Shown: positions 20,136 through 55,452, counted from the stretch's first letter. The stretch is 57,347 nt of DNA from Ginglymostoma cirratum (GCA_024137785.1 JAHRHZ010000168.1:55839-113185), one strand, 5' to 3'. Notes: generated by a model from the sequence alone, not told the origin. Program-made: numbers and translations.

Positions 20136-20214
20136 CAGAGAAATGCTCGAAGAAGAAATATTTTCGGGGGGCGTTGTGTGGAAATACATGCCATTAATTC
20201 AAGCGATCATCATA

Positions 20215-20305: not shown

Positions 20306-20762
20306 ATCCTACCAATGCCTCTCATGAATTTATAAACTTTTGTAAGGTCACTCCTCGGCCTTCAATGTTCCACGATAAAAGAGCCCCAGCCTATTCAGCC
20401 AAGTCCTATCGCTCAACCCCTCCAATCCTGGCAACATCCTTGTCAATGTTTTCTGAAACTTTTCAAGTTCACCAACATCTTTCCTATAATAGGGAGACTC
20501 GGACTGAATGCAGTATTCTAAAAGTTTTTCAACCAACGTCCTGTACGGCCACAACATGATATCCCAACTCCTAAACTCAATGAATTTTGAATGAATGTGA
20601 GCATGCCAAACACTTTCTTCAGCACACTGTCCAAATGCAACTTCACTTTCAAAGAACAACGCACCTGAATTCCCTGCTCTCTGTTTGGAAACACTCCTCA
20701 GGGGGCTACCATTAACTGCAAAGGTCCTGTCCTGATTTCTCTTACCAAAATGCAATACTTCA
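20306..20762 (-). mobile_element. CR1 ORF2 3' fragment
   Basis: HFGKRN..LEYCIQ..RMLPGLEGLS..RLGLF. Confidence 0.85.
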
Positions 20763-20764
20763 TG

Positions 20765-23100: not shown

Positions 23101-25020
23101 GAAAGCTGGTGTGAGATCCGGTGTCAGGCTCGAGTGTTTGGAACGGGAGTGAAATGGAGGATAAGAGAGTTCAGAGGAAAAATATCAGGTGTCCAGTTCG
23201 GTGGCCGAAGTGGACCTGTCTCTCATGCGTCTGTTTGTGTAAATGTGTGACATGGCTGAGAAGGTGAACGTTTGATGTAGAGTCTGCCTTTACCCTCCTG
23301 AGCGTGGGTGAAGCCATAACTGCCTGTCTGATGTTTTGGAGCAGAAGACTGATGGTGTCATCGGGTGTTGCTGCTGTTGCTAATCGCTCAGTGATCAGAG
23401 AGGTTTCAGTTCCTCCACCGATATGACCCTTCCCTTCCCCTCCATCTGGAGCTAGTTACCACACCACCTGCAACCCCTTCAAAAACAACCGGAAAACAGC
23501 ATCACTTCAGCTCTTGGTAACTAAAATGAGGTACTTGAAATGTCACCCAGTTCCCCTGAGTTTAAGGTCGAGGGAAGGTGCTGTGTTGAACTCAGACGCA
23601 CCCTTGGAGTCAGCTCTTCAACTGTGTGAATCGTCATTGCAGTGGCTTTAATCAGACTGGTAAAGGGTTATTTTTGTACATCAGCTTTCAAACCAACAAG
23701 CCTTAGAATACAACCTAACACTCCATCTGAACAAGAGGAGGCCATTCAGTCCTTCATCCATGCCACGCTGTTCTGTACAACCTAGGCTGATTGCTACACA
23801 ACCCCCCATTCCTTTCGCAGATACCTCGCCTCATTTCGTGCACAAAATTTGACTCATTTCAGCGTCTATCAGTCATAGAGAATGCTATAGATTCACGAGG
23901 CTCTGAGTTAAAGAATTTCTCTTCATCTCATCCAAATTGCCTGTTCACATAGGCTGGAAGGTGTTCTCGACTCTGCAGCTAGTGACTTTGGAATGGGGCA
24001 GTAGAATGTTGCTGGAGGTGGGACTGAGAGCAATGTGTCTCCACATCAACCCTGTCAGACCTTCTCAAACTCTGATATCTTTCCATTCTAATTTTGCGAG
24101 ATTTTAGGCGCACTCCCCTCATCGGGCAACCCCTTCCCCTTGGTGAATCTCCATAGTGATCCCTCAGAGAATAATCTATCGTTCCACAGGTGAGGAGACC
24201 ACAACTCTGCACATTGCTGCTGGAGTACTCTCACCAACATATTGTATAACTGCAGTAAAATATGTGTTGTTTGGCATTAGGTGAGAGTTGAGCCCAGATT
24301 TTCTAGCTCAAAGGTAAGGAAATTGCTACTGCACCAGAAGGGTCATTAAAAATTCTTCCTGCTATATTCTTGCTCTTTCACAATAAATTCTTGCACAGTC
24401 CTTCTGCAAACATTCACTCCTGCCACTCAGTAGCAGCAGTGTGTACCCATCCACAAGATGCACTGCAGAACTTCGCCAAAGGTCATTTGCACTTTCCAAA
24501 CCCACAGCCATTTCAAACCGAAAGGTCAACGACCGCTGTAACATAGTAACACCATCCCCTGCAAGTTCCCCTCCAAACCACTCACCATTCTATCATGAAC
24601 ATTTAATGGCCATTTCTTCAGTGTTGCTAGGTCAAAATTCCCTCCCTAATAGCACTGTGGATACCTCTACACCATACAGGACTGTACTGGTTCAAGAAGC
24701 CATCTCACCACCACCTTCTCAAGGGTCAAATAAGGGTGATAAATGCAGTCCCAAACAGGGACCCCACATCCCACAGCTGAATACAAGAAGTATTATTTCC
24801 TTTCCTAATCTGCGTGCTGTGCAGCTTGTTAACTTTCCCTATTCCCTGTATCCGTAATTCTTCTGACAATTCCTCTGACAACAAAAATATCTCTGGCCTT
24901 CCAGAAATATCCTTGTTGCCTTTCCTCCGACCAAAGTGAATAATTCCACATTTTCCACATCAAAGTCCACCTACCACTTCCTTACCCAATTGCTAATGCA
25001 GTCTCTATCCCTTTTCAACC
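22810..25020 (+). repeat. Local duplication, copy A
   Basis: Colinear similarity to 26557-29585 (e.g. ATGCGTCTGTTTG.GTAAATGTGTGACAT and GCTGCTGTTGCTAATCGCTCAGTGATCAGAG shared). Confidence 0.85.
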
Positions 25021-25194
25021 TCACTATTCCACTTCAAAGCCGACTCTCCTTCAAAGATTCATATCTTCATCTCCTCCTTCTGCCAAGTTCTCTTCACAGA
25101 TGGCCACACCATTACTAATTTAAAATCATGACAAGACCGAGGCCAGACGTACATTCCATATGTCACGGATCCTGACTCAAAGCAGAGCGCTGAA

Positions 25195-26810
25195 TAGGAA
25201 GTGACAGAGATAAGAGGGGTGTCGGGATGGGACTGCTACAGAGATAAGGACGGTGTGTTAGGGCTGGAGGAGGTGACAGAGATAGGGAGTGGTGTGGAGG
25301 TCGGAAGGGTTGACAGTGATAAGGACTGGGATTGCAATGGAGGTAATTACAGAGATGTGGAGCTTTCTATGGGTTGGTGGAGGTTACAGAGATAGAGAGG
25401 CGTGTAGCAGCTGGAAGGGGCTACAGAAATAAGGAGATGATGTACGGCGTGGAGGAGGTGACAGAGAGAGGGTATGGTGTATGACCTGGAGGAGTTTACA
25501 GCGATAAGGAAAGAAGTAGGATGAAGGGGGTTAAAGAGAGAATAAGGCGTTATAGAATGGAGGGTGTTACAGAGGTAGGTTGTGATGTAAGGCCTGGAGG
25601 AAGTTACAGAGGTAGGGATGGAGGAGGTGGAGAAGACTATGGAGATAGGGAGGCGTGTAGCATTTGGTGAAGGTCACTGAGAAAGGCATTGTTGTAGGGT
25701 CTGGTGAGGGATGTGCAGCTCAGAGAAGTTTGCACGGACGTTGTTGGGTGTGGGGGCTGCTGGAGGTAACAGACGTAGGGAATGGAATACGGGCTTGAAG
25801 AGGTGACACAAATAGAGAGGATGTAGGGAATGGAGGGAGGTTACGGGGTAGTGAGGGGTTCAGACGGGTTCAGGGATGGCAGAGGTTACGGAGATAAGGA
25901 GAGCTTTAGTGAATGAAGAAAGTGACAGAGATAGGGAGTAAATAGAGACCGGAGCAGGCTACAGTGAGGGGGAAGCGCGTGGAGGCTGGAGGAGCTGACA
26001 GAGCGATTAAGTGGTTTAGGAGGTGGAAGAGGTTGCAGACATATGGATGAGCGTAGGGCCTGGTTACAGAAATAAGGAAGGTGCCCGGGCTGCAGGTGGA
26101 AACAAAGGTAGGGAGTGATGCAGTGTCCAGAGCATGTTGCAGAGGTAGGTAGGAATATAAGCACTCGAATTGGTTGAAGACATAGGGATGGATGTAGGAA
26201 TTGGAGGAGTTGACAGAAATAGGGGAATCTACTGGCTGGAGAAAGTGGCAGAGATAGGGACGGGTATAGGAGCTTAAGCAGCTTATGGAGATGAAGTGGA
26301 ATATCGGAGCTGTAGGAGGTGACAGTGATAGGGAGATGTTTGGGGCTGGAAACAGTTACAGAGGAAGGGTGTAAGGACTGTTGGTGGTTACAGGGACAAG
26401 GAGGGTTGTAGGGGCTTGAGGGTGTTACAGAGATGGGTGGGGTGGAGGGGTTTAGAGAGAAAGTGGAGGGTAAAGGACTTGGAGTTGGTGCCAGAGACAG
26501 GAAGGGCTATGGGGCTGGAGGCAGTTACTGAGATAAGGATGTGGTGTAGCAGACGACAGTGACAGGTAAGATTTTAGGGGCTAAGGTTGTGACAAACACA
26601 CAGAGGGGCTTAAGGGATAATGAATTTGCAGAAATATGGAGAAGTGTAGGATTTGGAGGTGATTATAGAGATATGGAAAGATATAGCGGATGGAGGGTGT
26701 TTCAGAGATCGGATGGGTGAGGGATGGAATGTGTTACACAGGGCAAGGAGTGGTGTAGAGGCCGGAGAAGTTTATAGAAATGGGAGGGGTGTGGGATGTG
26801 GATTTTTGAA
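25195..26810. repeat. Purine-rich degenerate ~37-bp satellite, array 2
   Basis: Same unit as 20765-23100. Confidence 0.9.
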
Positions 26811-27454
26811 ATCTGGTGTGAGATCCAGTGTGGAGCTCGAGTGTTTTGGAATGGAGAATAAGAGGGCGCCGAACGTAACCAGCAGAAGTCCACTTCAGTT
26901 ATTTTGAGTGACGAGTCTCTTATGCGTCTGTTTGCGTAAATGTGTGACATTTCTGGAAGGGTGAGCTTTTGATGGAGGCTCTGCATTTTCCCTTCCGCTC
27001 GTGGGTGAAGCCACAGCTGCCTCTGTGATGCATTGGAGCAGACGACTGACGATACCACAGCGTGCTGCTGTTGCTAATCGCTCAGTGATCAGAGGGGTTT
27101 CAGTTCTTCCACCGACATGACCCTCCCCTTCCCCTTCATCTGGAGCGAGTGACCACACGCACCTGCGGTCTCTTCACAAACAGGCCAAAAGTAGCATCGT
27201 TTCAGCTCTTGGGGGCTAAAATCAGGCACTCGAAAATGCCACCCAGGTCCCCCATGTTTGTGGTCGAGATTCTGTGCTGTGTTGTACTCAGATGCAGAGG
27301 CAGTCTTGGATCCGGCTCTTGTATTGTGTGAATCATCATTGAGATGGGTTTAACCAGACTGTGAACTGGTTATTGTTGTACAGCAGCTTTCACAGATTCT
27401 CACGGCATGGAAGGAGGCAATCCATCCCATCGAGTCCACACCACATCCTGGGGA

Positions 27455-27800
27455 AGCATTGACCTAGTGGTATTATCGCTGGACTGTTAATGCAGCGACC
27501 CAGACAACGTTCTGGGGACCCGGGTGTGAATCCCGCCACAACAGATGGTGGAATTTGAATTCAATAAAATATCTGGAATTAAGAATCTAATGATTACCAT
27601 GAATCCATTGCCGATCGTCGGGAAACCTGTCTGGTTCCCCTTTAGGGAAGGAAATTGATAATCATACCTGGTCTTGCGTACATGTGACTCCAGACCCAAT
27701 AGCAATGTGGTTCACTCTTAACTGCCCACGAGTGAATTAAGGATGAGCAATAAATGCTGGCCTAGCCAGCTATGCCCTCATCCTGTGAATGAATAGAAAA
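27455..27800 (+). mobile_element. tRNA-derived Deu-type SINE (SacSINE1-like) nested in an HE1 SINE
   Basis: A/B-box-like head (CTAGTGG..GGGTGTGAATCCC), ACATGTGACTCCAGACCC core, AATAAATGCTGGCCTAGCCAGC tail. Confidence 0.75.
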
Positions 27801-27804
27801 CACC

Positions 27805-28085
27805 AACCCTTCCACGAGCATCCCACCCAGACCGTGCACCTAAATTATCCAGGTAACCCTACATTTCTCATGGCTGGTCCACACAGCCTGCACATTCCTG
27901 GATACTACGGGGCAATTTAGCATGGCCAATCCACCTAAGCTGAACATCGTTGAACTGTGGAAGGGAACCAAAGTACCAGGAGGAAAACCACACAGATTTA
28001 GGGCGAATGTGCAAACTCCATCAAACCCGAGTCCCTGGCACTGTGAGGCAGCAGTGTTAATCACTGAGACACTGTGTCGCACCAA
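27805..28085 (-). mobile_element. HE1-like V-SINE
   Basis: Reverse complement CACTGCTGCCTCACAGTGCCAGGGAC..TGGAGTTTGCACATTC..GGCCATGCTAAATTGCCC; its 3' tail lies at ~27390-27450. Confidence 0.8.
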
Positions 28086-30273: not shown

Positions 30274-30399
30274 GAGCCGGTGGGCCCTCTCCAATTTACG
30301 GGCACTGGGCGCAGACCATTTCCCGGGAGTTTACAACAAACAGTTCAACTGAAGGTTACACTCGGGCGGCTGGCTGCTTCCATGCATTCTCCAGCGAAA

Positions 30400-30448
30400 A
30401 TGTTTTGGACGCTGCATCTGTTGTGGGCTCTGCTGCTCCACGTCACAG
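30400..30448 (+). CDS. Ig light chain leader exon
   Basis: MFWTLHLLWALLLHVT(G), hydrophobic signal peptide; phase-1 donor G|GTCAGA; alternative in-frame ATG at 30382. Confidence 0.92.
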
Positions 30449-30529
30449 GTCAGAAATTGCCTTGGAGTAACATCTGTCTATTAAATACTGGTCAGTTTTG
30501 TTTCATCCTGTGTGTTTCTTTAATTGTAG

Positions 30530-30877
30530 GTACCTTGGCTGATGCTGTCCTCAACCAGAGTCCAATTTCTGACCCAGTTTCTGTTGGTCAGACCGCCCGG
30601 TTGAAGTGTGTGCTGCCGAACGATAGTGTGGACAGTTACGACGTGCGTTGGTACCGACAGAGTCTCGGAGAAACCCCAGTGTTTGTGCTCCAGCATAAGG
30701 TTGATGGTGCAATACACAGAGGCACCGGCTTCACTGACCGTTTCCAACCTTCTCGAGACTCCTCCACTAGCAGTTACATCCTAACCATCGAAAACGTGGT
30801 CTCTGATGATGCTGCCATCTATTACTGTGAAATGTGGGGATACATCTTAGGAGGTGGAACCGCCCTGACAGTTCGGA
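30530..30877 (+). CDS. Germline-joined VJ exon, Ig light chain sigma-cart (type I/NS5-like)
   Basis: Acceptor TGTAG|G; DAVLNQSPISDPVSVGQTARLKC..WYRQ..RGTGFTDRF..DAAIYYC-EMWGYI-LGGGTALTVR; donor A|GTAAGT; no intervening RSS; the PISDPVS and RGTGFTDRF frameworks and long CDR2 match shark type I L chains as I recall them. Confidence 0.95.
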
Positions 30878-31059
30878 GTAAGTGATTCTGTTTTGTCTCC
30901 CTCTCTCTCTCCCTCTATCTATCTATCTGCCTCTCTCTCTCTATCTATCTATCTACTTATCTCTCATTCAGATGAGTTCAATTTTTATCCCTTCAGAGTC
31001 GATACTGTTTCCATATGTCACCAAATCACGATTTAATACATTTTGCAACATATCTAACT

Positions 31060-31990
31060 CATACTCACAAGACAAATTATTATATCAATAATTCTGCTAG
31101 TCACAGATGCAAACAGGACAGACAGTTGATGATATTAANNNNNNNNNNNNNNNNNNNNNNNNNNNNNNNNNNNNNNNNNNNNNNNNNNNNNNNNNNNNNN
31201 NNNNNNNNNNNNNNNNNNNNNNNNNNNNNNNNNNNNNNNNNNNNNNNNNNNNNNNNNNNNNNNNNNNNNNNNNNNNNNNNNNNNGCACACACAAGTCGGA
31301 TAGAATATATCAATAATTCTCACGTACAGGTCAGTGTTTTATTAATAATTCTCTCTCTTTTAAAGAAACACACAGGGAAGAGTATTATTTGTATCAATAA
31401 CTCTCTCTATCACTTGCCGTTGCCCTTTCTCACACACGCACATAGGTCAGAGATTAAATCAATAATCCTCTACCACACGCGCAGCTCAGTGTTATATTAA
31501 TAATTCTCTCTCACACACGCGCATAGAGGTTAGCATTTTATATGAACCAATTATTCTCTTACACATAGGTCAGATAGCTGTATTTATAACTCTATCTTTC
31601 TGTCTCGCACACACAAGTCACAGTGTTATTACACGTACATTAATCAATCTCTCAGTCTTGACTCCTCTGACACACACACACACACACACAGGTCATTGAT
31701 ATATATTAATCTTTCTCTCCTTTTCACGCACATGCACACAAGTTAGAGTACTATACGTTAATAATTTTTTATCTCTGTCCTACACACACAAACACACACA
31801 AATACAGACACACAGCCAGAGAGTTACATATATTAATGATTCTCTGTCCCTCACACAATTCTAAGTTTTAGATATATAAATAATTCTCCCTCACATACAA
31901 ATATGAGTTAATCTTTTTCTTCATATATATAATTCTCTCTCTCTCTCTCTCTCCGTCTCCCCTCTCGCCCCTCCCCCCCAACACACACAG
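31060..31990. repeat. Degenerate minisatellite filling the J-C intron
   Basis: Repeated ATATATTAATAATTCTCTCT..CACACACAGGTCAGTG-like units; includes a 145-N gap. Confidence 0.75.
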
Positions 31991-32319
31991 GTAGTGATGA
32001 TCAGAAACCATCTGTCCTTCTGCTACCTCCTTCACCAGAGCAAATAGACACGGGATCAGCCACTCTGTCCTGTCTGGTGAGTCGCTTTAAGCCGGGCTTT
32101 GTGCAGATCCGCTGGAGCATAGATGGAAAAGAGACAGAGAGCGGGGTGACCACAAGCGCTGTGTCCCCAGACAGTGATCAAAGTTACAGCCTGAGCAGTT
32201 ACCTGACAGTTCCGGCCACTGACTGGAAGAAAGGTTCCAGATATTCCTGCAGTGTGAGGCACAGTTCACTGAACTCTCCTCTCCTCAACACCATCAGCTC
32301 CAGTGACTGTCAGCTCTGA
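31991..32319 (+). CDS. Ig light chain constant exon (sigma-cart type)
   Basis: Acceptor CACAG|GT; (S)SDDQKPSVLLLPPSPEQIDTGSATLSCLVSRFKPG..W..YSLSSYL..YSCSVRH..SSDCQL*; C1-set Cys/Trp and C-terminal interchain Cys intact. Confidence 0.96.
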
Positions 32320-35027: not shown

Positions 35028-35560
35028 TAGAACAAAGAACAAACAAAATTACAGTACAGGAACAGGCACTTTGGCCCTCCAAACCTGCACCAACATGCTG
35101 CCTGTCACAACTAAAACTCCCTACCCTTCCGGGGGAGCGTATCCCTCTTTTCCCATCCTCTTCATATATTTGTCAAGACGACTGTTAAAAGTCACTGTAG
35201 TATCTGCTTCCACTACCTCCCCCAGCAGCGGGTTCCAGGCACCCATCAAGCTCAGTGCAAAAAACTTGCTTTGTACATCACTTTTAAACCTTGCCCCTCG
35301 CACCTTAAACCCATGGTCCTTGGTAACTGACTCTTCCAACCTGGGAAAAAGTTTCTGACTGTTCATTCCCTTCACAATCTTGTAGAACTCTATCAGGTCA
35401 CCCCTTAACCTCCGTCCTTCTATTGAGAACAACCCAAGTTTCTCCAACATCTCCTCATACCTAATGCCCTCCATACCAGGTATCATGCTGGTAAGTCTTT
35501 TCTGTACCCTCTCCAAAGCCAACTAATCCTTCTGGTAGTTTGGTGATGGTCTGTACCTCC
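35028..35560 (-). mobile_element. CR1 3' fragment
   Basis: LERVQKRLTSMIPGM..LGLFSIEGRRLRGDLIE; (TTGTTCT)n tail. Confidence 0.88.
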
Positions 35561-40876: not shown

Positions 40877-41808
40877 CTAGGTTGCTGTGAGTTGAACTTT
40901 TTTGTTTGATTTATTAATTAGCTGAATAGCTAATTGAAGAGGCAATTGCATAACACTCCTTAAGTTGTCTCTGAACTTGGCCTGAGTCACCCCATAAATA
41001 AATGTGTTTATGCAGCAACATAAGTTCCGCAGCATGAATCCGACTTGTCCGAAGATATACAAAGAATCATTATAATATCGTGGATTTATTCCTGCAATGC
41101 TGTAATATAAGAAATCTATAACATATGTGAACCACAGAAGAATGAAGCTCCCCGATATGGTGAAGAGTAATATCACAGACTTCCTTCTACTCTCCATCTC
41201 TGTGTCACTATGATTTTCTGTCTTGGTCTGAACCTTCAGCCTCTTACGGATTTGGCTGGCTACTAGAATGCGTCTGACTGTCAGGGCATTGAGTAAGAGA
41301 ATTAAAGCGAATGGTAGCAGTGGCGTTAAAAACTTGTCAAACCAGTCAAACCCTACCCAAGCAGGAGAAGTGTAATAGCTTGGCTTCTTATAACAGAGCC
41401 ATGGCACGTTGTCAATTATCTCCCCGGGTTCTTTTGTAAAATAGAATGGAACATTTTTTAAGGACAGCAGAATGGAAGCTGTTATTAAAACGACAGCTGC
41501 TGTTTTCTCATTGCAATATTTTGCTTTTAGTGCCTGGCAGCAAATTGCAACATATCGATCAAAGGAGAAAGTGATGGTGAACCAAACAGAACAGTCCATT
41601 GCTGAATGAGTCAAGGCATAGAGGAGGCTACACACAGGCGTGATATCAAGAACAGATCTCGGGAAATAATAATAACTGATCCGAAACAGGACAACATCAA
41701 TGACAATGAACACTAAGTCTGCTGTGGACATGGCCACCATGTAGCGAATGGTGCAGGTAGATAGACCACACTTCCGCCGTGCTAGGATCACAATTGCAAC
41801 TAAGTTCA
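40877..41808 (-). CDS. GPR139/GPR142-like orphan class A GPCR, exon 2
   Basis: Acceptor CACAG|TG; hydrophobic TM segments, AMSTADL (TM2), SFDRYVAICC (TM3), LLP (TM5), NTFIY (TM7), TM3/ECL2 cysteines; open to stop. Confidence 0.92.
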
Positions 41809-41925
41809 CTGTGAGAGGAAAAGGGGAAAATTAAATTGAAACTACTGACGAAAAATTTCTCATATCAAACATGGAAGGAATAGAAAAAGAAGATAACCAC
41901 AAATTGATCGAGCACTGTCACTTAC

Positions 41926-41992
41926 CAGGTACACCAATGACAGCAAGGAGCATGTAGAATATTCTTTTACTTCTGTAAATTAATTCACGCAT
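41926..41992 (-). CDS. GPR139-like GPCR, exon 1
   Basis: ATG..MRELIYRSKRIFYMLLAVIGVP(V); phase-1 donor G|GTAAGT; 117-bp intron; spliced product 332 aa. Confidence 0.88.
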
Positions 41993-42645
41993 TTTGTGCT
42001 TCAAATGATATGTCCTTTCCTTCTGGAGGCAATCTCTCAAAATTAACCAATGAAGTGATGCCTTCACGGAATATGTAATATATACTTATGGTAAGTCCCC
42101 AAAGAGTCAGAAATTGCAGCATTGTTTAAGTAAGATGTTTTTAATTGGAACCAACAGGTTACAACATGTATTAGTCTCTGTTTGTGCTAGAATATGCTTC
42201 ATGACAAACTAAGTTGGAATATTCCACAGCCCAAGTAATTTTGATCACCGTAATTACATAAATAAAATCGCAAGATGCCTTATTCCATCAAAGACAATAT
42301 TCACTCAAATTCAGACAGAAAAGTAAAGCAGAAACACATTATGCAAATTATCGGAGGTTGTTGAGTTCCGAGATGCAGAATGATCTTGGTGTCCTGGTGT
42401 ACCAACTGCAGAATGTTCGTGTGCAGGTACAGCAAGTAATCAGGAAAACTAACAGACTGTTATATTTTATTTTGAAGGTAATGGAATGCAGGAGTAGGGA
42501 GGTTATTCTTCATTTCTCGAGGGCATTGGCGAGATCACTTCTGGAGTACCATGCACAATACTGGTCATTGCACTTACAGAAACATGTTGATCTGTTGGAA
42601 ATAATTCAGAGAAATTTTTCAAGAACAGTATCTTGAATGATTGGA

Positions 42646-43239
42646 GATAACAAGCATGGGGCTGGATGAACACAGCAGGTCAAGCAGCATCATAGGAGCA
42701 GGAAAACTTGACGTTTCGGGCCTAAACCCTTCATCAGAAATCAGATGATNNNNNNNNNNNNNNNNNNNNNNNNNNNNNNNNNNNNNNNNNNNNNNNNNNN
42801 NNNNNNNNNNNNNNNNNNNNNNNNNNNNNNNNNNNNNNNNNNNNNNNNNNNNNNNNNNNNNNNNNNNNNNNNNNNNNNNNNNNNNNNNNNNNNNNNNNNN
42901 NNNNNNNNNNNNNNNNNNNNNNNNNNNNNNNNNNNNNNNNNNNNNNNNNNNNNNNNNNNNNNNNNNNNNNNNNNNNNNNNNNNNNNNNNNNNNNNNNNNN
43001 NNNNNNNNNNNNNNNNNNNNNNNNNNNNNNNNNNNNNNNNNNNNNNNNNNNNNNNNNNNNNNNNNNNNNNNNNNNNNNNNNNNNNNNNNNNNNNNNNNNN
43101 NNNNNNNNNNNNNNNNNNNNNNNNNNNNNNNNNNNNNNNNNNNNNNNNNATATCTCCTATGATGCTGCTTGACCTGCTGTGTTCATCCAGCCCCATGCTT
43201 GTTATCTCGGATTCTCCAGCATCTGCAGTACCTTTTATC
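42646..43239. mobile_element. PLE insertion bounded by inverted terminal repeats, interior in a 400-N gap
   Basis: pLTR on minus 42646-42745 and on plus 43155-43239; TSD TCTTGAATGATTGGA (42631-42645) / TCTTGAATAATTGGA (43240-43254). Confidence 0.85.
42705..42742 (-). ncRNA. Intact minimal type I hammerhead ribozyme motif
   Basis: Reverse complement GATTT-CTGATGA-A-GGGTTTAGGCCC-GAAACGTC-AAGTT; all core boxes intact; GUC cleavage triplet. Confidence 0.8.
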
Positions 43240-44826
43240 TCTTGAATAATTGGATTGTCTCAGACGAAAGATGAACCAGACTAGGCCTGTATCCCGGAGT
43301 TTAGAGCAATCAGAGGTGACTTAATTGAAATATAAAAGTGCCTGACGGGACTTGACCAGTTAGATGTGGAAAGAAAATTTCCTCTTTCTAGAGAATCTAG
43401 AACTAGGGACATAGTTTACAAATAAAGGGTCACACTTCTGAAACATAGCAGGGCCACGAGGGAGAAGAGTGAGGGAAGGAAATAGCAAGTTTACAGTTTA
43501 AGAGGGAGAGAGATGCATATAATCCCCACACACTTTAGAGACATGTAATAATGTCTCGAAGCAGTTTGATTAGAAATATGGACTTCCATTCGAATTAGTC
43601 CAAATACATATGGGCATGGCAAGATTTTGAAGAAGGGTCGTTCAAATTCATTCTGATCAAATGTTTCTTACTGACTTCTGAATGGGAGAAAAGACAGGGC
43701 ACGTCCTTTCAGGCGTCAAATATAGCCTCTGTCAATGAATTGTGCTTCTCTGTTACATCATTCTATGCTCAACCAGTGCCTTCCTGTCTGAGCCTGTTTG
43801 ATGGGGACAGTATCAAGGAAGTTTTATTTTCAGAATAAAAGAGTAGAGCAAGCTTTCCTCTTCATCTAAACCTGCGATGTCCATGTGGTAGAAGTTTTTG
43901 ATGGGTACACTTTAGAGACAGTTTTACATTGTGTGTAACTGATATTGTCGCTGGTATTGAGGACTTTTGATGGGGACAATGTAGAGAGAGATTTGCTTTG
44001 AATATAGAAGAATAAAGAGAGCTTTAGACCGTAGCTAACCCCATATGTACCTGTCCTGTGGGGTGTTTCATTGCAACAGCTTTACTTGCCGTTTTAAAAG
44101 AGCAAAAGAATCTTTAGGGGTTCTAGCAAGTCAGTGATACTGACTCTACTACTGAGCCAGAAGGCTGGGGTTCATGTCTCACCTGTTCCAGATGTGAACA
44201 GTTTGACTAAATTTCCAAGCAATCGTTTCCAGTTGAACCCCAACACACACACACACACGGTTTTCACAATTTCACTCCTCTGTGTGTGTGAAGCTGATGT
44301 CACCACCGAACTTCTTGTCCCTCTGCTAATGTTTAGAACCCTGGTACAGCGCTTGAAACAGAGCAAGTGGATTCTTTCTGTTTAACCAGACCAGATATTT
44401 TAAACACCCTAATCATCCCGAATAGACAATGTCACTCTCTTCTTAATCACCACAGGACATGGACAGCACAGGGTACGATACAGAGTAAAGTTCTATCTAG
44501 ATATTTTCTGATGAACCTGTTTGGGCATGTTACATAGTACTGGAGCAGGTGGAACTCGAATGTTGGCCTCCTGGCTCAGAGGCACAGAATAATAATATTC
44601 ACAATGTGACTGCTTTAACCCCACCACCAATCCACAGAATCATCATGCAATGTATAATTTCTGACCTTCAGTATCCAGATCGATACTTACTGCTTTCATT
44701 CCTGCTAACATGTTAAATATTGCCACTTTGTGTTGGGAGCAATGGAAAGTTTAGTAGACTTTGGCAGCCAACACGTTTTTTGCAAAACAGATGTAAGGAA
44801 AACATACGAAGAAAATGAAACTTCAT

Positions 44827-44904
44827 AAGGGTCTAGGCCCGAAACGTCAAGTTTTCCTGCTGCTTGACCTGCTGTGTTCATCCAGCCCCATGCTTGTTAT
44901 CTCT
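44827..44904 (+). mobile_element. Tiny PLE terminal-repeat fragment (hammerhead lacking its CUGAUG box)
   Basis: AAGGGTCTAGGCCCGAAACGTCAAGTTTTCCTGC.. near-identical to 1288-1375. Confidence 0.8.
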
Positions 44905-45164
44905 TCACGCTTACCTGTTCTGTTTGTTCACATAGTCGCGAATTCTCTGTCCATTTTCCTGATATGAAGAGAGGTGTTAAATATTTATACAAAGGACACT
45001 GATCCAGTTTACAAAGACCAAATTCTAACTTCCTGCCTCCCAATCCACAAGTACTCTACCCGACTTTACAACAGATGGTTACTCAGGACAAATGCAATTC
45101 ACTGCGAGTTTCATCAATAATGGAGAAATAGCTATTATAATAACACAGCGAAGATTAACAAGAG

Positions 45165-45565
45165 CACAGAACGTTCCAGAAGACACTTAACCTGGCTGTA
45201 ACTTCGAGAGACGGAATTCATTTTTTATATTTAAGTGGGACTTATACTTATTGGAACAGAATAGAATCTTTCTTTATCGGGAATGGTTAGTAGTTTGAAG
45301 GGATTTATTCGATTTGTTAATAATTTGGTTAAATTTGTTCGCTGTTACCGTTAGATACATAAATTGTTACTTGCTGATTTTAAAGTGTGTCAGGAATTTA
45401 TTTTATTTGACCGCTACAAGTTGCTAACCCTAACCCTAACCCGAACCCTATCGCAGGTTATGCCACTTTTCTCTCTCCATTTACAAATTATAGGGCGAGA
45501 TGTTCTTCTTAGGGTGTTTCAGTGTCAGTTCTCAGAGGAGGGGGTCAGCCTCCACTTTATAATAC
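45165..45565 (+). mobile_element. Gypsy LTR fragment homologous to 8560-8939
   Basis: Colinear similarity ending in CCTCCACTTTATAA. Confidence 0.75.
45424..45450 (-). repeat. Interstitial telomeric repeat (~4.5 TTAGGG units)
   Basis: CTAACCCTAACCCTAACCCGAACCCTA. Confidence 0.8.
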
Positions 45566-46729
45566 AGTCATTCAAGTAAATTTCTCACTTTGGCAATCTG
45601 AGTGGGATTTTAAACATTTATAAGTTTTTAACAGCTTGTAAAACAGAGCTGCAGGATTATTGATGAATTCTTCCAAGTGACGTCATGGGGTCATATCTTG
45701 GATCATTTTTGAAGTGTAGATGGGATATATGTAATGCCATCCTGTGGAATTTCTAGTATAACAGACGCTGAAGGAATTGCTGGCAAATTGAAATGTATGG
45801 AGCCTCCAAAACTAACTGGTTAAGAATTTGATGAGTGCAACTGGCAGTACAAAAATAGTTTTAAATAGAGGCTGATACTACTAAAATCCTACTTTAACAT
45901 CAGTGTAACCATTCAACAGGCCAGCAATGTACCTTGAAGTCCCTCCTAAATGCACAAATTCCTGACACCTTTGCACCCACACATTCAGTGAATCAACATA
46001 GCCTCCCTACCTCCCCCACACCCCAGATTCCAAAACACAGCCTCTAGACGTAACAACCCAAATCACGCTAACCAAACCCACATCCCCCCCCCTTACCTGG
46101 CACACCCCACTGCACTTCTTATCGCCATCGCCTTGTAATCAGACCCAATACATGCCACCCCCTAATTTTTATCCAAAGTCTCCCCTCACCCTAGACCCCT
46201 TGGGACTGAAATCCCCTTAGTCCCTAAGACCTGACACGACCCTTAGCCTCCCTCCCATAGACCTCTTGACTGGTACAATATCCGCAAACATCCACTTTGT
46301 CCACCACCAACGCTCAGTAGCAATATTTTTGTTCTTATCTGCAAGTGCTTCACTCATTGTATATGTTTTGGTGATTTCTAAATTGAGTTGGAGAATCATG
46401 TACAGAATGTAGGATGAAAATCTATTGGCTGACACATGGAAGATCATCACTATTAATGGTGCCATTGATTGTGATAGAGCAGAGAAGATGAAATTAAACA
46501 TAAACGTTACATTTGATTTTCTCCCTAATTCATTGGAATTGATATTGCAGGCAATGGTCAACTGCGGCTATACAATTATTGCACTCTGCAGACAATAAAG
46601 AGTTTATGTCGCTAGATTTCTACAACAGAGTTTTGAAATAATTAGTGTTTACACCAGAGCTGACAATATTAGGTGGGGTTAAATGATGCTATAGAATCAT
46701 CAGTATGTAAAAAGATGACCATGCTCAGG

Positions 46730-46890
46730 GATAGTAAGAACTGCAGGTGCTGGAGTCAGAGATAATACAGTGTGTAGCTGGAGGAAAACAGCAGGCCAAG
46801 CAGGGTCAGAGGAGCAGGAAAGTTGACGTTTCAGAAAGGTCCCAACCTGAAACTCAACTTTCCTGCTCCTCTAATGCTCCTGGGCCTGAC
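46730..46890. mobile_element. PLE terminal-repeat remnant folded into an inverted repeat
   Basis: Arms 46808-46834 and 46847-46872 are near-perfect reverse complements. Confidence 0.75.
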
Positions 46891-47363
46891 CATGTTCAGG
46901 AGTGTTCAAAACACTTGTGAAGATAAGGAGATTAGGTTGTTAATATAAGAAGTTCAAGGTTGTTCGTACAATGTTGTTTGAGAAGACCTTCTGTTATGAG
47001 GTGAGGTGAGGACAAATTGTTAGACGGAGACGTTGAGAAGCACCGTATTTTGTAGTAACCTCAGTTGCTGCTTGAATTGAATTAGCATCTCTCTGCATAA
47101 CAAGCCAGTTGCCAAGCCAACTGATCTAACCAATCCCCCTGGAATCAGGTTGCACACCCAACTGAATTAATGCCAGTTTAATTATCTTATCAGAAAAGTA
47201 TGCTCATACTTTTGAGGCTTTCCAAATTAACTTCAGGGCGAGTTATAATCTATCGACATGGAATTACCTCGGCTGTTGTAAACTGTGTTTATTTTTTGCA
47301 TTGTAACAAACCAAATGGAAAAGAAATGTTACAAATATTATATCTCTGTGAGATCTCGCTGTG

Positions 47364-47371
47364 TATAAAAA
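47364..47371 (+). promoter_or_regulatory. TATA box of the GPCR pseudogene
   Basis: TATAAAAA ~85 bp upstream of exon 1; the intact paralog has TATATA at a similar distance (~42078-42084, minus). Confidence 0.55.
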
Positions 47372-47450
47372 CTCTGAGAAATTAACATGTCAGAGTTTGC
47401 GTCATACAGATTGCTTTCAGCAGCGAAGGAGAGTTTTATTCACAGGGAAA

Positions 47451-50116
47451 ATATATCTTCTCAGGCAAATAATTGCAAAAATATACTACACGATCCTTGT
47501 AATGGTTGGTGTCCCTGGTAAGTGACTATTAGCATTGAAGTTGCATCGATTTGTTTTGGGGAAGTTTCTGGCTTTTGTGAGGGTGAATGTTACCCACTTT
47601 ATTACTGATCCTGGTTAAAACGAGACATGGTTCAGGAAAGTCAATGCATTACTTGTTGCTCTGGATGACATCTGCAACTTTCCTCACTTGCCTCAACTCA
47701 AAGTAAGACTCTGTAGGTGACAGGCTTGATTATTGATCAAAGTATTGGATGTTATTGAGACTATGGAAAGAAAAATAGAAAATAGAAGCAGAGGTTGCTC
47801 ATTTGGTCCTTTGAGATTGCTCGGTCTCTCAATGTGATCATGGTTAAACATTTAACTCAGATCCTGTTTCTACTTTCTTCCCCAATACGCTCTGATCCAT
47901 TTTGAACAATACCTATCTCCTTCTTGAAAACATTCACTGTCTTGGCTTCAAATGTTTTCTGTGGCAGAGATTGCCACAGGCTTACAACTCTACATGAAGA
48001 CGTTTCTCCTCATTTCAATCCTACTCCATACCATTAGACTGTGACCTCTGGTTCTGGACCATCAAGAACATCCGTCCTGCATTTATCTTGTTTCATCCTG
48101 TTAGAAATTTATGGGTTTATTTCAGACAATGGTCCTAATCAGCGTGGAAGCCAGTATCACTATTATAGACAATAGATTGAGTGCTGGGACATCTCCAAAC
48201 AAGACCCGAGATACTTGTCAGGCAATGGTGCACTATTACATAAATAGAACTGCGTCCATGAGGGTTTCCCATCCTGGGGCATTTTCAAGTCTGTTATTAC
48301 CCTAACCTGGATAACATTCTGAGTCCAGTCCAAAGTTTCTTATCTCAGGCAGCACTCAAGATTTTGCAACGGGATTGTGTTAGTGATTGCCCACTGACAT
48401 GAGCAGGGCTCTGACATCGAAGATGCGTGGGATGCAATATCTGTGCATGGTGTGGGGAGTTGTCCACATCTAGAAGTGTCTTGGTATATTGAGAGACCTC
48501 CTGTTTTGAGGTGGTGCTCCAAATTCCTTCGTGTGACTGAAAGATTTTTGAACCAGAGAAATGATCCCTGCTTTGATCTCTTCAAGCAAGTAGACAGAGT
48601 TATAAAACATCTCATATCCATTGGAATTTTCTGTGTTCAAGGGGTTTTCCACATCTGCCTTTGTCTGGACATCTCTGGATATTTGGAACACTACCTACTC
48701 AAAACCAACGCGTGGGTCTCCTATCCAGAGGTATCTTTCTGTCTAGATGCTGGTCTTATTTTCAGAAATATTCTAAATCAAGATGGTACATTTTGATCTA
48801 CAGAAGTGACCCTATTCTGCAAGAGGTCTGGTAGCTCTGGGAAATTCTCTGCCTCTCGGTGTGGAACTCCTTTCTTCAGAAGTGGTACAAGTCAAGGGTG
48901 ACAATCTCCTATTTGAGCAGTGAATGAGTCCCAGGCTCTCCTAATTTTATTGTACCTTCTTATCTATTTCTTGCCAGATGCTAGGTAACTGCTCCAGCTT
49001 TGGTAATTTGGTGAGTGAACATGGTGGAGGGAGACTGTGGTCATTGTTGAAATGCTTCAACTTCAGAATTGGTGCCAGTCCACTGGTTTTGAATGATATA
49101 TTGCATCCTTAACTGTCTAGGCACAAACACTTGAAATACTTGATGCCCAATTCTCAGATATTTCTCCTGTCTGTTTTTGAAGTTACTTTGGTATTGATTG
49201 TGATCCTGTCCCGGGGAACGTGTGGTCTCTCTAATTGCCCCTCTTACTATCTGGTGGCTATGGCAATGGCAGATCTTTCTGTCAATATTACTGAGGTAAT
49301 ACTAAGGCAATTCAATTGATATTATTTCCCAATGTGTTTCCTGGACATCACCCCTGCGTGCCGCATCCGCTATATCCTCATGTATGCAGCAAGAGACTGT
49401 TCTGTCTGGTATACTGTCATTTTTACCTTTGATAGATTTCTTGCCATTTGTTCTCTAAGGCTGAAAAGTACATATTGTACTGAAAAAACCGCAGCCACGC
49501 TTCTTGCAACAAGCTCTGTTCTGCTCTGTCTAAAAAAATCCCTTACTACTTTGTATATGAGCCTGGGAAAATCATTAATAACGTCTCCTGGTTCTGTAAT
49601 GTGAAATCAAGCAATTATACTGAGGCTGCATGGGTAATATTTGATTCATTTGTTGCAGTCTTAAGCCCATTGCTCCCATTAGCTTTAATTCTTTTGTTCG
49701 ATGTTTTGACTGTTCGACACATTTTGACAGCCAGTCGAGTCCGCAAGGCCCTAAAAGGTCAAAACATAGGAGGAAATCTAAGTGACCCAGAAATGTCCAG
49801 CAGAAGGAAGTCTGTGATTTTACTTTTCGCTGTATCAGGGAGCTTCATACTTTTGTGGCTGGTGTATGTTTTATACACCTTTGATATCTCAGACCGATTA
49901 GATCATGGTTCATTTTACACCTTCGGGCAAGTCGGATTCATGCTGTCCAATTTAAGTAGCTGTACAAATACATTTATTTACATGACAACTCAGTCCAAGT
50001 TCAGAGGTCATTTCAAGAGCATGATGAAATATCCGCTTGCAATGACCATTCAATTAATCAATATGTCTAGCAGGAGAGGGCAGACCAAACATACAGCAGC
50101 TAAAAGCAAGCTGTGA
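47451..50116 (+). pseudogene. GPR139-like GPCR pseudogene (exon 1 47451-47517, exon 2 49183-50116)
   Basis: 67-bp exon 1 ..KIYYTILVMVGVP|GTAAGT begins with ATA instead of ATG; in-frame TGA at 49317-49319; 1-nt frameshift in the A-run at ~49532-49538; DRF and NTFIY motifs; AATAAA at 50160. Confidence 0.92.
47770..48120 (-). mobile_element. Degraded CR1 3' fragment in the pseudogene intron
   Basis: (AGAAAAT)n tail and CR1 3' UTR similarity. Confidence 0.6.
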
Positions 50117-52676: not shown

Positions 52677-55452
52677 TAGAACATAAGAACATAAGGACAT
52701 GGAGCAGGAGTAGGCCGTCTGGCCCTTCAAGGCTGCTCCGCCATTCAATAAGATCATGGCTGATCTTTTCGTGGACTCAGATCCACTTACCCGCGCTCTC
52801 ACCATATCCCTTAATCCCTTTATTGTTCTAAAAAATACCTACCTTAACATTAAAAACGTTTACTGAAGTAGCGTCAACTACTTCACTGAGCAAGGAATTC
52901 CATAGATTAACAACCCTCTGGGTGAAGCAGTTCTTTCCCAATTCAGTCCTAAATCTGCTCCCTCTAATCCTAAGTCTATGCCCTCTTGTCCTAGCTTCAC
53001 CTGCCAGTGGAAACATCCTCTCTACTTCTATCTTATCGATTCCCATCATAATTGTATATATTTCTACAAGATCCCCCCTCAATCTTCTGAATTCCAATGA
53101 ATATAATCCCAATCTACTCAGTCTCTCCTCATAAACCAACCCCCTCAACTCCGGAATCAACCTAGTGAACCTCCTCTGCACCCCCTCCAGTGCCAGTATA
53201 TCCTTTTTCAAGTAAGGTGACCAAAACTGCACACAGTACTCCAGGTGTGGCCTCACCAGCACCTTGTACAGCTGCAACATAACCTCTCTGCTTTTAAACT
53301 CAATCCCTTTAGCAATGAAGGGCAAAATTCTATTTGCCTTCCTAATTATTTGTTGCACCTGCAGACCAACCTTCTGTGATTCATGCACAAGGACACCCAG
53401 ATCCCTCTGCATAGCAGCATGCTACTTTTTACCATTCACGTAATAATCCTTTTTACTGTTACTCCTACCAAAATGTATGACTTCGCATTTATTTACATTG
53501 TATTCCATCTGCCAGACCTTTGCCCACTCACTCAATGTATCTATGTTCCTCTGCAAGGTTTCACAGTCCTCTGCACACTTTGCTCTGCCACTCATCTTAG
53601 TGTCATCTGCAAACTTTGACACCCTACACGTGGTCCCCAACTCCAAATCATCAATATAAATTGTAAATGATTGCGGTCCCAACACCGATCACTGAGGCAC
53701 ACCACTAGTCACTGATTGCCAGCCAGAATAGCACTCATTTATCCCCACTCTTTGCTTCCTATTAGTCAACCAATCCTCTAACCATGCTAATACTTTACCC
53801 CTAACGCCATGCATCCTTATCTTATGCAGCAGCCTCTTGTGTGGCAGCTTGTCGAAAGCCTTTTGGAAATCCAGGTACACCACATCCACTGGGTCCCCTT
53901 TGTCCACCTTGCTCGTAATGTCTTTATCGAATTCCAAAAGATTTGTCAAGCATGACCTGTCCTTCATGAACCCATGCTGCGTCTGCCCAACGGGACAATT
54001 TCTATTGAGGGGCCTTGCTATTTCTTCCTTGATAATAGACTCAAACATCTTCCCCACTACAGAGGTTAAGCTAACCAGTCTTTAATTCCTCATCTTTTGT
54101 CTACCTCCTTTTTTAAACAGTGGCGTCATATTTGCTGTTTTCCAGTCTGCTGGGACTGCCCCAGAGTCCAGCGAATTTGGAAAATTACTGCCAGTGCACC
54201 TGCTATTTCTCCCGCCATCTCTTTTAGTACCCTGGGATGCATTCCATCAGGACCAGGAGACTTATCAATCCTTAGCTCGATTAGCTTGCCCAACACTACC
54301 TCTTCCATAATAATGATTGTTTCCAGGTCCTCACCTACCTTCGTCTCTTTGTCAATTACTGGCATGTTATTAGTGTCCGCCACTGTGAAGACCAATACAA
54401 AATATCTGTTCAAAGCCTCGGCCACTTCATCATATCCCATAACTAAATTCCCCTTCTCATTCTCTAAAGGGCCAAAGTTTACTTTAGCCACTCTTTTTCC
54501 TTTTATATATTTATTGAAACTTTTGCTATCTGTCTTTATATTCTGTGCTAGTTTTTCTCATGTGCTATCTTACTTATCTTTATAGCTCTTTTTGTGGCTT
54601 TCTGCTGACCTTTAAAGTTTTCCCAATCTTCTAGTTTCATGCTGTTTTTGGCCACTTTGTATGCCTTCTCTTTCAATTTGATTGCCTCCCTTCTTTCCTT
54701 AGACACCCATGGCAGATTGCCCCTTTTCTTACGGTCCTCCCTTTTCACTGGAATGTACTTTTGCCGAGCACTTTGAAAAATTGCTTTGAAAGTCCTCCAC
54801 TACTCGTCAACTGTCCCACCATAAAATTTTTGTTTATAGTCTACTTTAGCCAAGTCCTCCCTCATTCTATTGTAGTCCCCCTTGTTCAAGCACAGGACCC
54901 TGGTATTGGATTTTATCTTCACACTCTCCATCTGTATTCTAAATTCAACCATACTGTGATGACTCCTTCCAAGAGGATCCCTAACTATGAGGTCATTAAT
55001 TGTTCCTGTCTCATTACACAGGACCAGATCTAGGATAGCTTGCTCCCTTGTCGATTCCATTACATACTGCTCAAGAACACTATCATGTATGCACTCAACG
55101 AACTCCTCCTCAAGGTTACCCTGACCGAGCTGGTTCGACCAATCTACATGTAGGTTAAAATCCCCCATGATAATTGCCGTACCATTTTTACAGGCATTAG
55201 TTATTTCTTTGTTTATTGCCTGACCCAATGTGATGTTATTATTTGGTGGCCTATAGACTATGCCTATCAGTGACTTTTTCCTCTTAGGATTTCTAATTTC
55301 CACCCAAATCGATTCAACCTCTTTCTCCATAGAACCGATATCATCTCTCAGCACCGCCCTGATGTCGTCCTTGAATATCAGAGCTACACCAACTCCCTCA
55401 CCTTCCTGTCTGTCCTTCCGAATAGTCTGGTACCCCTGGACATTTAACTCGC
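52677..55452 (-). mobile_element. 5'-truncated CR1 LINE ORF2 (endonuclease + RT), frameshifted
   Basis: IVYRPPN..IIMGDFN..LDLVL..SHH (APE), VYLDFQKAFDK, SGVPQ, SKFADDTK; (TATGTTCT)n tail at ~52678-52700. Confidence 0.93.

What the first reader, a model, noticed from the sequence alone, without database searches (positions are those of the whole stretch)
40877..50116. Head-to-head pair of GPR139-like orphan GPCRs (one intact, one dead) beside an Ig minilocus: candidate uncharacterised shark receptor repertoire
Seen: two diverged paralogs with identical architecture (67-bp exon 1, phase-1 intron after GVP, very short N-terminus), one with three disabling lesions, 8.5 kb from the Ig C exon. TM and intracellular segments are conserved while extracellular loops differ, including an ECL3 length change. 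Established: mammalian GPR139/GPR142 are single-copy receptors activated by aromatic amino acids, and sharks have few classical odorant receptors. Inference: clustering, pseudogenisation and loop divergence are the birth-and-death signature of a chemosensory or immune receptor family. This may be a lineage-expanded amino-acid/peptide-sensing repertoire, either olfactory/gustatory or leukocyte-expressed and co-amplified with Ig clusters. It is my best candidate for an undescribed system in this window.
Basis: partly seen in the sequence, partly recalled or inferred. Interest (0 to 1): 0.8.

Follow-up and report, generated by a model that had tools for sequence, protein, structure and literature searches.

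The report
Shark orphan-receptor gene pair, one dead
One working and one dead gene of a very large, unstudied receptor family of sharks and rays lie back to back here; across the family the variable residues sit in the ligand pocket, as in smell or taste receptors, and nothing ties the genes to the antibody gene next door.

Summary
Gene A (minus strand, 40877-41992) is an intact two-exon gene for a 332-aa class A GPCR. Gene B (plus strand, 47451-50116) has the same architecture but is dead. Its start codon is ATA, it has an in-frame TGA, a 1-nt frameshift in an A7 run, N1.50 changed to T, and a deletion at the top of TM6.

The assembly gap (42750-43149) is intergenic and lies between inverted copies of a high-copy repeat. 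It touches neither reading frame.

Both genes belong to a chondrichthyan-wide family. The best 120 relatives are all from sharks, 65 of them from one species. GPR139 is the nearest solved receptor, but the family lacks the Arg6x51 that marks GPR139/142. It is a separate clade from a conserved single-copy GPR139-like gene that sharks also keep.

A and B are not sister copies. Paralogues cluster by species. Positions matching GPR139 ligand contacts evolve about four times faster than the rest (p about 1e-8). This fits a ligand-diversified sensor repertoire.

The expressing tissue is unknown, and the read data were uninformative. Nothing supports co-amplification with Ig. I found no paper on the family. 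This scan had already noted it in other windows of the same genome.

The parts
41926..41992 (-). Gene A exon 1 (67 bp; encodes MRELIYRSKRIFYMLLAVIGVP plus the first base of the next codon; donor GTAAGT follows)
   Evidence: Sequence read; coordinates and translation. The N-terminus matches the family N-termini (M..IYY.ILA.IGVP|VNL).
41809..41925 (-). Gene A intron (117 bp, GT..AG, phase 1)
40877..41808 (-). Gene A exon 2 (310 codons plus stop). Covers the end of TM1 to helix 8. Intact, with DRY, W6.48 and NTFIY present.
   Evidence: ORF; 7tm_1, 2e-20; AlphaFold model, pLDDT 91.2; 63-71% identity to shark proteins.
47451..47517 (+). Gene B exon 1 relic (67 bp). ATA at 47451-47453 stands in place of ATG. 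Ends GGT GTC CCT G, followed by donor GTAAGT.
   Evidence: the 3' 41 nt align to A exon 1.
47518..49182 (+). Gene B intron (1665 bp, GT..AG)
49183..50116 (+). Gene B exon 2 relic (pseudogene). Lesions: TGA at 49317-49319; 1-nt loss at the A7 run 49532-49538; N1.50 to T; deletion at the TM6 top and ECL3.
   Evidence: (tblastn hits in two frames).
42750..43149 (.). Assembly gap (400 N) in the intergenic space between the two 5' ends. Not filled or looked up.
   Evidence: no gene ORF crosses it.
42644..42741 (.). High-copy short interspersed repeat on the left flank of the gap
   Evidence: self-BLAST; other copies at 1278-1409, 44827-44903, 46740-46834, 15701-15804; summed contig depth about 1e6.
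43154..43242 (.). Inverted copy of the same repeat on the right flank of the gap
   Evidence: 43154-43208 is 100% identical to 42698-42644 in reverse complement.

Best explanation
The two loci are members of a chondrichthyan-specific, massively expanded branch of GPR139-related class A GPCRs. Annotation pipelines label its members 'probable G-protein coupled receptor 139'.

Gene A encodes a complete 332-aa receptor. It has an extracellular N-terminus of about 7 residues, the canonical TM3-ECL2 disulfide cysteines, DRY, W6.48 and an N-T-F-I-Y motif. Gene B is a decayed paralogue from a different, old sublineage.

The family evolves by birth and death, with expansions specific to each species. 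Its scaffold is tightly conserved: the intracellular loops, most of the ECL2 hairpin and helix 8. Substitutions are concentrated at the residues that line the orthosteric pocket.

Inference: each paralogue binds a different small ligand and signals through one shared G-protein interface. The family would then work as a ligand-diversified sensor repertoire, most plausibly chemosensory. The expressing tissue and the ligands are unknown.

The antibody light-chain cluster 8.6 kb away is a neighbour, not a partner.
For: Shown:
- Gene structures and lesions.
- 7tm_1 match and a confident 7TM model of peptide-receptor-like class A fold.
- 1305 relatives at E<=1e-3. The best 120 are all from sharks: 65 Heterodontus, 27 Pristiophorus, 10 Cetorhinus, 7 Heptranchias, 5 Mustelus and others.
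- 111 clusters at 50% identity with E<=1e-30.
- Members occur in rays, skates and Callorhinchus.
- The family profile hits GPR139 at 83.5 bits against 61 bits for the next receptor.
- On the tree the chondrichthyan clade (SH-aLRT 90-92) is separate from a conserved single-copy orthogroup (Latimeria, sturgeon, amphibians, reptiles and sharks' own copy; support 100).
- Species labels change 15 times on the tree, against 32-41 in 200 shuffles.
- The 19 positions homologous to GPR139 ligand contacts (listed in PMC8807744) have entropy 2.08 against 0.71 bits (p 1.7e-8).
- Their tree-aware site rate is 2.06 against 0.52 (p 1.3e-8). They supply 12 of the 30 fastest sites, where 1.9 are expected.

Inferred: diverse ligands, shared coupling, a sensory role.
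Against: - There is no expression evidence. The only read support is one 242-nt contig on exon 2 of A, in a run of unknown kind, with no spliced joint.
[quoted passage not shown] Sparsely expressed receptors would escape such a list.
- Olf/EBF-like and homeodomain sites upstream of both exon 1s occur only at background density.
- A deviates at 22 of 156 columns that are at least 90% conserved; the family median is 6 and the maximum 13. Most of its changes are conservative, but relaxed constraint on A itself is not excluded.
- Entropy and site rates are not dN/dS. Positive selection was not tested, because no coding DNA of relatives could be fetched.
Confidence: 0.7

Rival explanations
1. Immune reading: the family is expressed in leukocytes, like chemoattractant receptors, and was amplified together with Ig or TCR clusters.
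For: Gene A lies 8.56 kb from an Ig light-chain C exon. Earlier notes of this scan report copies inside TCR V arrays of the same genome (unchecked leads). The family profile's second-best solved hits are chemokine receptors (CCR5 at 61 bits).
Against: The window has one Ig cluster and no repeated Ig-GPCR unit. A and B are anciently diverged and are not products of a shared recent block duplication. Family members sit on many different chromosomes or contigs in Heterodontus (contig-length column). The scan's windows of this genome appear weighted towards immune loci, judging from its notes, so adjacency may be ascertainment. There are no expression data.
Confidence: 0.08
2. Internal-signal reading: the paralogues are receptors for endogenous peptides, metabolites or neuromodulators in brain, gut or peripheral sensory neurons. 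The expansion would resemble that of MRGPRs, and the family would not be external chemoreceptors.
For: GPR139, the nearest solved relative, is a brain neuromodulatory receptor (PMC8807744). The fold is nearest to peptide receptors (SSTR1, GALR1, NTSR1), with a beta-hairpin ECL2. ECL2 is largely conserved in the family.
Against: Dozens to hundreds of species-specific paralogues with a hypervariable pocket are hard to match with a limited set of endogenous ligands.
Confidence: 0.17
3. Decay reading: the local pair has no function. A is an open but drifting relic and B a dead one, left by old segmental duplication in transposon-rich DNA.
For: B is certainly dead. A sits on a long terminal branch (0.34) and deviates at 22 of 156 conserved columns. 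No transcript was shown. Earlier notes describe many dead copies elsewhere in this genome (leads only).
Against: A keeps a 999-nt open frame, canonical splice sites and all the class A microswitch residues I checked. Most of its deviations are conservative. By my rough estimate, neutral drift along a branch of that length would give several stops or frameshifts. Part of the long branch reflects the absence of same-species paralogues from the protein set.
Confidence: 0.05

Closest known systems
GPR139 / GPR142 (vertebrate orphan class A receptors activated by L-Trp and L-Phe; structures 7VUG and 9M42)
   Same: GPR139 is the closest solved receptor by sequence, both for gene A alone (E 7e-7) and for the family profile (83.5 bits, 22 bits above the next). 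Both share the TM1 motif G-x-P-x-N, the TM2 motif YL.A.A.AD, a non-proline residue at 7x50 (T here, F in GPR139), W6.48 and short termini.
   Different: Arg6x51, reported in PMC8807744 as unique to GPR139/142 and essential for activation, is Tyr here. F3x33, H5x43 and N7x38 are not kept. ECL2 aligns about 12 residues longer than in GPR139 (a 12-residue gap in the alignment), and the model folds it as a beta-hairpin. The family has dozens to hundreds of copies per genome against one each for GPR139 and GPR142.
The conserved single-copy 'GPR139-like' orthogroup of non-mammalian gnathostomes (for example Latimeria XP_005988539; also sharks, sturgeon, teleosts, amphibians, turtles, squamates)
   Same: It bridges the shark family (27-28% identity, about 108 bits) and GPR139 (70 bits). 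It carries the same database name.
   Different: It forms its own clade (support 100) with roughly one copy per species and 55-66% identity across gnathostomes. Sharks have their own orthologue (P0300, P0303, P0307), so the expanded family is a separate lineage. The sister of the expansion on the tree is a small salamander group (P0244 type, support 99). Long branches meet at that join.
Vertebrate chemosensory GPCR families that arose from ordinary receptors (OR, TAAR; also MRGPR as a non-olfactory example)
   Same: Large lineage-specific expansions, pseudogenes, genomic clustering, and a conserved scaffold with variability focused on pocket-lining positions of TM2, TM3, TM6, TM7 and ECL2.
   Different: No expression in sensory neurons has been shown. 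No Olf/EBF plus homeodomain promoter signature is seen here. The genes have a two-exon coding region with an intron in TM1. There is no homology to OR or TAAR beyond class A membership.

Membership tests
Class A (rhodopsin-like) GPCR | Pfam 7tm_1 match above the gathering score | tested here: met
   Gene A exon 2 scores 73.8 bits against a cut-off of 30.5. The largest piece of B scores 33.7 bits.
Class A (rhodopsin-like) GPCR | Seven-helix fold with helix 8 | tested here: met
   AlphaFold model with pLDDT 91.2 and pTM 0.85. At least 500 Foldseek hits to class A receptors.
Class A (rhodopsin-like) GPCR | Microswitch residues N1.50, D2.50, D/ERY, W6.48, N7.49..Y7.53, and the C3.25-ECL2 cysteine pair | tested here: met
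   In gene A: N2, D31, D84-R85-Y86, W226, N268..Y272, C60 and C139. P7.50 is replaced by T. B has lost N1.50.
GPR139/GPR142 proper | Arg at 6x51 (unique to GPR139/142, required for activation; PMC8807744) | tested here: not met
   Position 229 of A exon 2 is Tyr. The family consensus is Tyr at 70%.
GPR139/GPR142 proper | Ligand-contact residues F3x33, H5x43, N7x38 | tested here: not met
   3x33 is His in A and variable in the family. 5x43 is a conserved Asp. 7x38 is Phe in A and variable in the family.
GPR139/GPR142 proper | Non-proline residue at 7x50 | tested here: met
   N-T-F-I-Y in the family against N-F-F-L-Y in GPR139.
GPR139/GPR142 proper | Orthology: one conserved copy per genome | tested here: not met
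   65 distinct Heterodontus proteins among the best 120 hits. Human GPR139 scores only 32 bits against A. True GPR139/142 sequences were not in my tree, so the exact branching order is untested.
GPR139/GPR142 proper | Activation by L-Trp or L-Phe | not testable with these tools
   Needs a cell-based assay.
Chemosensory receptor repertoire (functional kind) | Large lineage-specific expansion with pseudogenes | tested here: met
   One of the two local copies is dead.
Chemosensory receptor repertoire (functional kind) | Variability concentrated in the ligand pocket | tested here: met
   Entropy 2.08 against 0.71 bits, p 1.7e-8. Site rate 2.06 against 0.52. 12 of the 30 fastest sites are pocket positions, p 3e-9.
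Chemosensory receptor repertoire (functional kind) | Expression in sensory neurons, sparse and one receptor per cell | not testable with these tools
   No RNA run on record holds the gene. One 242-nt contig of unknown library kind is the only read support.
Chemosensory receptor repertoire (functional kind) | Olf/EBF plus homeodomain promoter elements (a lead from note s1-879732) | tested here: inconclusive
   There are 3 and 4 Olf/EBF-like sites (2 mismatches or fewer) in the 651 bp upstream of A and B. The window-wide density is 3.0 per kb. The two upstream regions do not align.
Ig-linked, co-amplified immune gene | A repeated Ig-GPCR unit, or copies that share a recent duplication with the Ig cluster | tested here: not met
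   The window holds only A and B. They are old paralogues. No Ig-GPCR block repeat appears in the self-comparison of the spacer between the genes.

The most novel reading that the evidence does not exclude
This chondrichthyan-specific family, and not the four classical families, is the main odorant or other external chemosensory receptor repertoire of sharks and rays. It would be a fifth vertebrate olfactory GPCR family, recruited from a GPR139-like neuromodulator receptor much as TAARs were recruited from aminergic receptors. It would explain how animals with 2-3 OR genes and about 30 V2Rs smell so well.
Probability: 0.3. Interest if true: 0.9.

Novelty: new variant of a known kind. Interest (0 to 1): 0.55.

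Why it matters
Sharks are known for acute chemical senses, yet their classical olfactory receptor repertoire is small. The catshark has 2 canonical OR genes plus 6 OR-like genes, and 32 canonical V2R genes. Many of these are expressed mainly outside the nose (PMC11979771).

A class A receptor family with dozens to hundreds of species-specific paralogues and a fast-evolving ligand pocket is an obvious candidate for the missing sensor repertoire. The literature I could search does not mention it. The question can be tested directly with existing shark genomes and tissue RNA-seq.

For this window the practical result is more modest. It holds one probably functional member and one pseudogene. The antibody gene beside them is a neighbour only.

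Tried and rejected
1. Expression. The look-up of sequencing runs found no run on record as RNA. Read laying placed one 242-nt contig on exon 2 of A and nothing across the intron. This is uninformative.

2. Genomic context of relatives.

3. Olf/EBF plus homeodomain promoter lead. Sites occur at background density, and the two upstream regions are unalignable beyond exon 1.

4. Literature. Seven searches on GPR139, sharks, elasmobranchs, expansion and related terms found no paper on this family. The Sensory Shark paper has no supplements held as text. A 2026 preprint on OR evolution was irrelevant.

5. Structure ranking. Foldseek does not single out GPR139, which ranks 9th among generic peptide-type class A receptors, so the fold does not discriminate. 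The protein atlas only repeated the database name.

6. Careful tree. The 'careful' tree with bootstraps did not finish in two 300-s runs. I report SH-aLRT supports from the quick PMSF tree.

7. Recent inverted duplication. I considered A and B as a recent inverted duplicate pair and rejected it on the tree.

8. True GPR139/142 sequences could not be brought into the tree.

9. Joined models. All searches used exon 2 by reference. Exon 1 was compared only with family N-termini. B was read through only with X at its two breaks, in scripts.
Full report
**What is there**

On the minus strand a 310-codon ORF (40877-41809) is preceded by an AG acceptor and a 117-bp intron. Upstream of the intron is a 67-bp exon that starts with ATG and ends ...GGT GTA CCT G before a GTAAGT donor. 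Together these give a 999-nt CDS of 332 aa.

On the plus strand, tblastn with A's exon 2 finds a second copy in two frames (49182-49538 and 49532-50095; 54-56% identity, E 2e-81). Its exon 1 relic lies at 47451-47517. It has the same length, phase and donor, but ATA where the ATG should be.

B also carries an in-frame TGA at 49317-49319 and has lost one base at an A7 run (49532-49538). N1.50 is replaced by Thr, and four residues are missing at the top of TM6 plus one in ECL3. The homopolymer frameshift alone could be an assembly error.

The window holds no other copy.

**The gap**

The 400 N at 42750-43149 lie 757 bp upstream of A's start codon, in the 5.46-kb space between the two 5' ends. 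No exon or ORF of either gene reaches them.

Both flanks are copies of one short interspersed repeat in inverted orientation. 42644-42698 equals the reverse complement of 43154-43208 at 100% identity. The repeat is present at very high copy number in the runs laid, with a summed depth of about 1e6.

The gap therefore does not affect either reading frame. The adjacency and divergent orientation of the two genes do depend on the scaffold join.

**What the genes are**

A's exon 2 matches Pfam 7tm_1 (2e-20). With a 70-sequence family alignment it folds into a confident seven-helix receptor (pLDDT 91.2). The model has a beta-hairpin ECL2 and a long helix 8. Its nearest folds are peptide-type class A receptors, with GPR139 at rank 9.

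The word-indexed protein search returned 1305 relatives. The best 120 are all from sharks at 63-71% identity. Nearly all are named 'probable G-protein coupled receptor 139' by NCBI. They comprise 65 from Heterodontus francisci, 27 from Pristiophorus japonicus, 10 from Cetorhinus, 7 from Heptranchias, 5 from Mustelus, and others from Scyliorhinus, Stegostoma and Chiloscyllium.

Their N-termini repeat A's exon 1 almost word for word, up to the ...IGVP|VNL junction. The short first coding exon therefore appears to be a feature of the whole family.

The exhaustive search of 50%-identity representatives gave 111 clusters at E<=1e-30. Name look-ups place members in electric rays, skates, manta and Callorhinchus. 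No hit exceeds 71% identity to A, so this species' own proteins are evidently not in the databases.

**Relation to GPR139**

A alone hits only GPR139 among solved structures, and weakly (32 bits, E 7e-7). The family profile hits GPR139 at 83.5 bits (E 1e-22) against 61 bits for the next receptor, CCR5. GPR139 is thus the nearest characterised relative.

The family is not GPR139. Using the profile alignment and the residue list of the GPR139 cryo-EM paper (PMC8807744):
- Arg6x51, stated there to occur only in GPR139 and GPR142 and to be essential, is Tyr.
- F3x33 and N7x38 are variable.
- H5x43 is a conserved Asp.
- W6.48 and a non-proline 7x50 are shared.

Outside cartilaginous fishes the nearest proteins (27-28% identity) are 'GPR139' models of coelacanth, salamanders and teleosts. 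They hit GPR139 better than A does (70 and 53 bits).

A search from the coelacanth protein showed that it belongs to a conserved, roughly single-copy orthogroup. The group is present in sharks (66% identity), sturgeon, bichirs, teleosts, amphibians, turtles and squamates.

On a PMSF tree this orthogroup is one clade (SH-aLRT 100). The chondrichthyan expansion is another (90), joined at 99 to a small salamander group. Long branches meet at that join. Sharks therefore keep the conserved gene and, separately, the expanded family.

**Dynamics**

Inside the expansion there are many deep subfamilies with near-identical orthologue pairs between congeners, for example Scyliorhinus canicula and S. torazame. 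There is also a crown clade (support 99-100) in which paralogues cluster by species. Species labels change 15 times on the tree, against 32-41 in 200 shuffles.

A sits in the crown on a long terminal branch (0.34). B groups with a Chiloscyllium and a Mustelus protein at SH-aLRT 95, to the exclusion of A. The head-to-head pair is therefore not a recent local duplication. The two genes are old paralogues that happen to be neighbours.

**Where the family varies**

Among 92 close relatives most of the protein is strikingly conserved, including ICL1, ICL2 and much of ECL2.

I took the 19 GPR139 residues reported to contact agonists or docked amino acids and mapped them through the profile alignment. 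The homologous positions have a mean entropy of 2.08 bits against 0.71 for all others (Mann-Whitney p 1.7e-8). The result also holds within helices alone.

Tree-aware site rates give the same answer: 2.06 against 0.52 (p 1.3e-8). Twelve of the 30 fastest sites are pocket positions, where 1.9 are expected (p 3e-9).

The fastest sites are 2x61, 3x29, 3x32, the ECL2 tip, 6x54 and 7x38, plus ECL3 and the position one helical turn above 7x38. This is the pattern of a family that diversifies its ligand pocket on a fixed signalling scaffold. It is not a dN/dS test.

Identity is 61% in TM segments, 48% in ICLs and 46% in ECLs, with ECL3 at 0/8 and a length change.

**Is A alive?**

A keeps an open frame, canonical splice sites and all the microswitch residues I checked. 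It deviates at 22 of 156 columns that are at least 90% conserved, against a family median of 6 and maximum of 13. Most of its changes are conservative. B deviates at 28 such columns and is gapped at 3 more.

I read A as probably functional and from a sublineage not sampled in the databases. Relaxed constraint is not excluded.

The read tools gave only one 242-nt contig on exon 2, in a run whose kind is unknown, and no spliced joint. Expression is therefore not shown.

**The antibody neighbour**

A germline-joined VJ ORF (30280-30885) and a C exon ending at 32319 lie 8.56 kb from A's stop. The space between, and the flanks of the pair, are full of transposon fragments.

Nothing in the window repeats an Ig-GPCR unit. 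Earlier notes of this scan report the same family among TCR V segments and elsewhere in this genome. The windows scanned in this genome appear weighted towards immune loci, judging from those notes, and I could not run a genome-wide test. I treat the link as unsupported.

**Promoter lead**

Here such sites occur at background density, and the two upstream regions do not align.

**Literature**

Seven full-text searches found no paper on this expansion. The catshark sensory-organ study considers only OR, TAAR, ORA and V2R. It reports 2 canonical OR genes plus 6 OR-like genes, and 32 canonical V2R genes. [quoted passage not shown]

The spliced A protein was never joined or searched as one sequence. 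Exon 2 was used by reference throughout. B was read through only with X at its breaks, in scripts.

**Verdict**

The genes are real members, one live and one dead, of a large and apparently undescribed cartilaginous-fish receptor family related to GPR139 but distinct from it. The family's pocket-focused diversity points to a sensor repertoire. The tissue, the ligands and any immune connection remain open.

Noticed in passing
window 30280-30885 and 32077-32319 (+): A germline-joined Ig light-chain VJ reading frame (...YYCEMWGYILGGGTALTV) is followed about 1.2 kb downstream by a C-domain exon ending ...SSDCQL*. An assembly gap (31139-31284) lies between them. Another note of the scan covers this (s1-879551).
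   Followed up: partly
window 1278-1409, 15701-15804, 42644-42741, 43154-43242, 44827-44903, 46740-46834: At least six copies of one short interspersed repeat. In the public runs laid, the 42644-42700 part reached a summed contig depth of about 1e6, so it is a very abundant SINE-like element. Two inverted copies bracket the assembly gap.
   Followed up: partly
window 10870-12825 (-), 52828-55354 (-), 35121-35522 (-), 14872-15543 (+): Several LINE-type reverse-transcriptase and endonuclease ORF fragments. The longest is 355 aa, at 10870-11937. The GPCR pair sits in transposon-rich DNA.
   Followed up: no
proteins P0237, P0300-P0417 (not in the window): A conserved, roughly single-copy 'GPR139-like' orthogroup occurs in sharks, coelacanth, sturgeon, bichirs, teleosts, amphibians, turtles and squamates. 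No bird or mammal appears among the 120 listed hits. Some gene models are fused to TMEM183A, which hints at a conserved neighbour. It looks like an unnamed third member of the GPR139/142 group that was lost in some amniotes.
   Followed up: partly
proteins P0244, P0270, P0273 (salamanders): A small salamander-only group is the sister of the whole chondrichthyan expansion on the tree (support 99, long branch 1.4). If real, the expanded lineage predates the split between cartilaginous and bony vertebrates.
   Followed up: partly
window about 85-95 bp upstream of 41992 (-) and of 47451 (+): Both exon 1s have a TATA-like stretch (AAGTATATATTAC; TGTATAAAAAC) about 85-95 bp upstream of the start-codon position.
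   Followed up: no
window 18000-28000: Blocks of strongly alternating GC skew, with low-complexity serine/leucine-rich ORFs on both strands (for example 18023-18855). These look like simple-repeat or satellite-like sequence.
   Followed up: no
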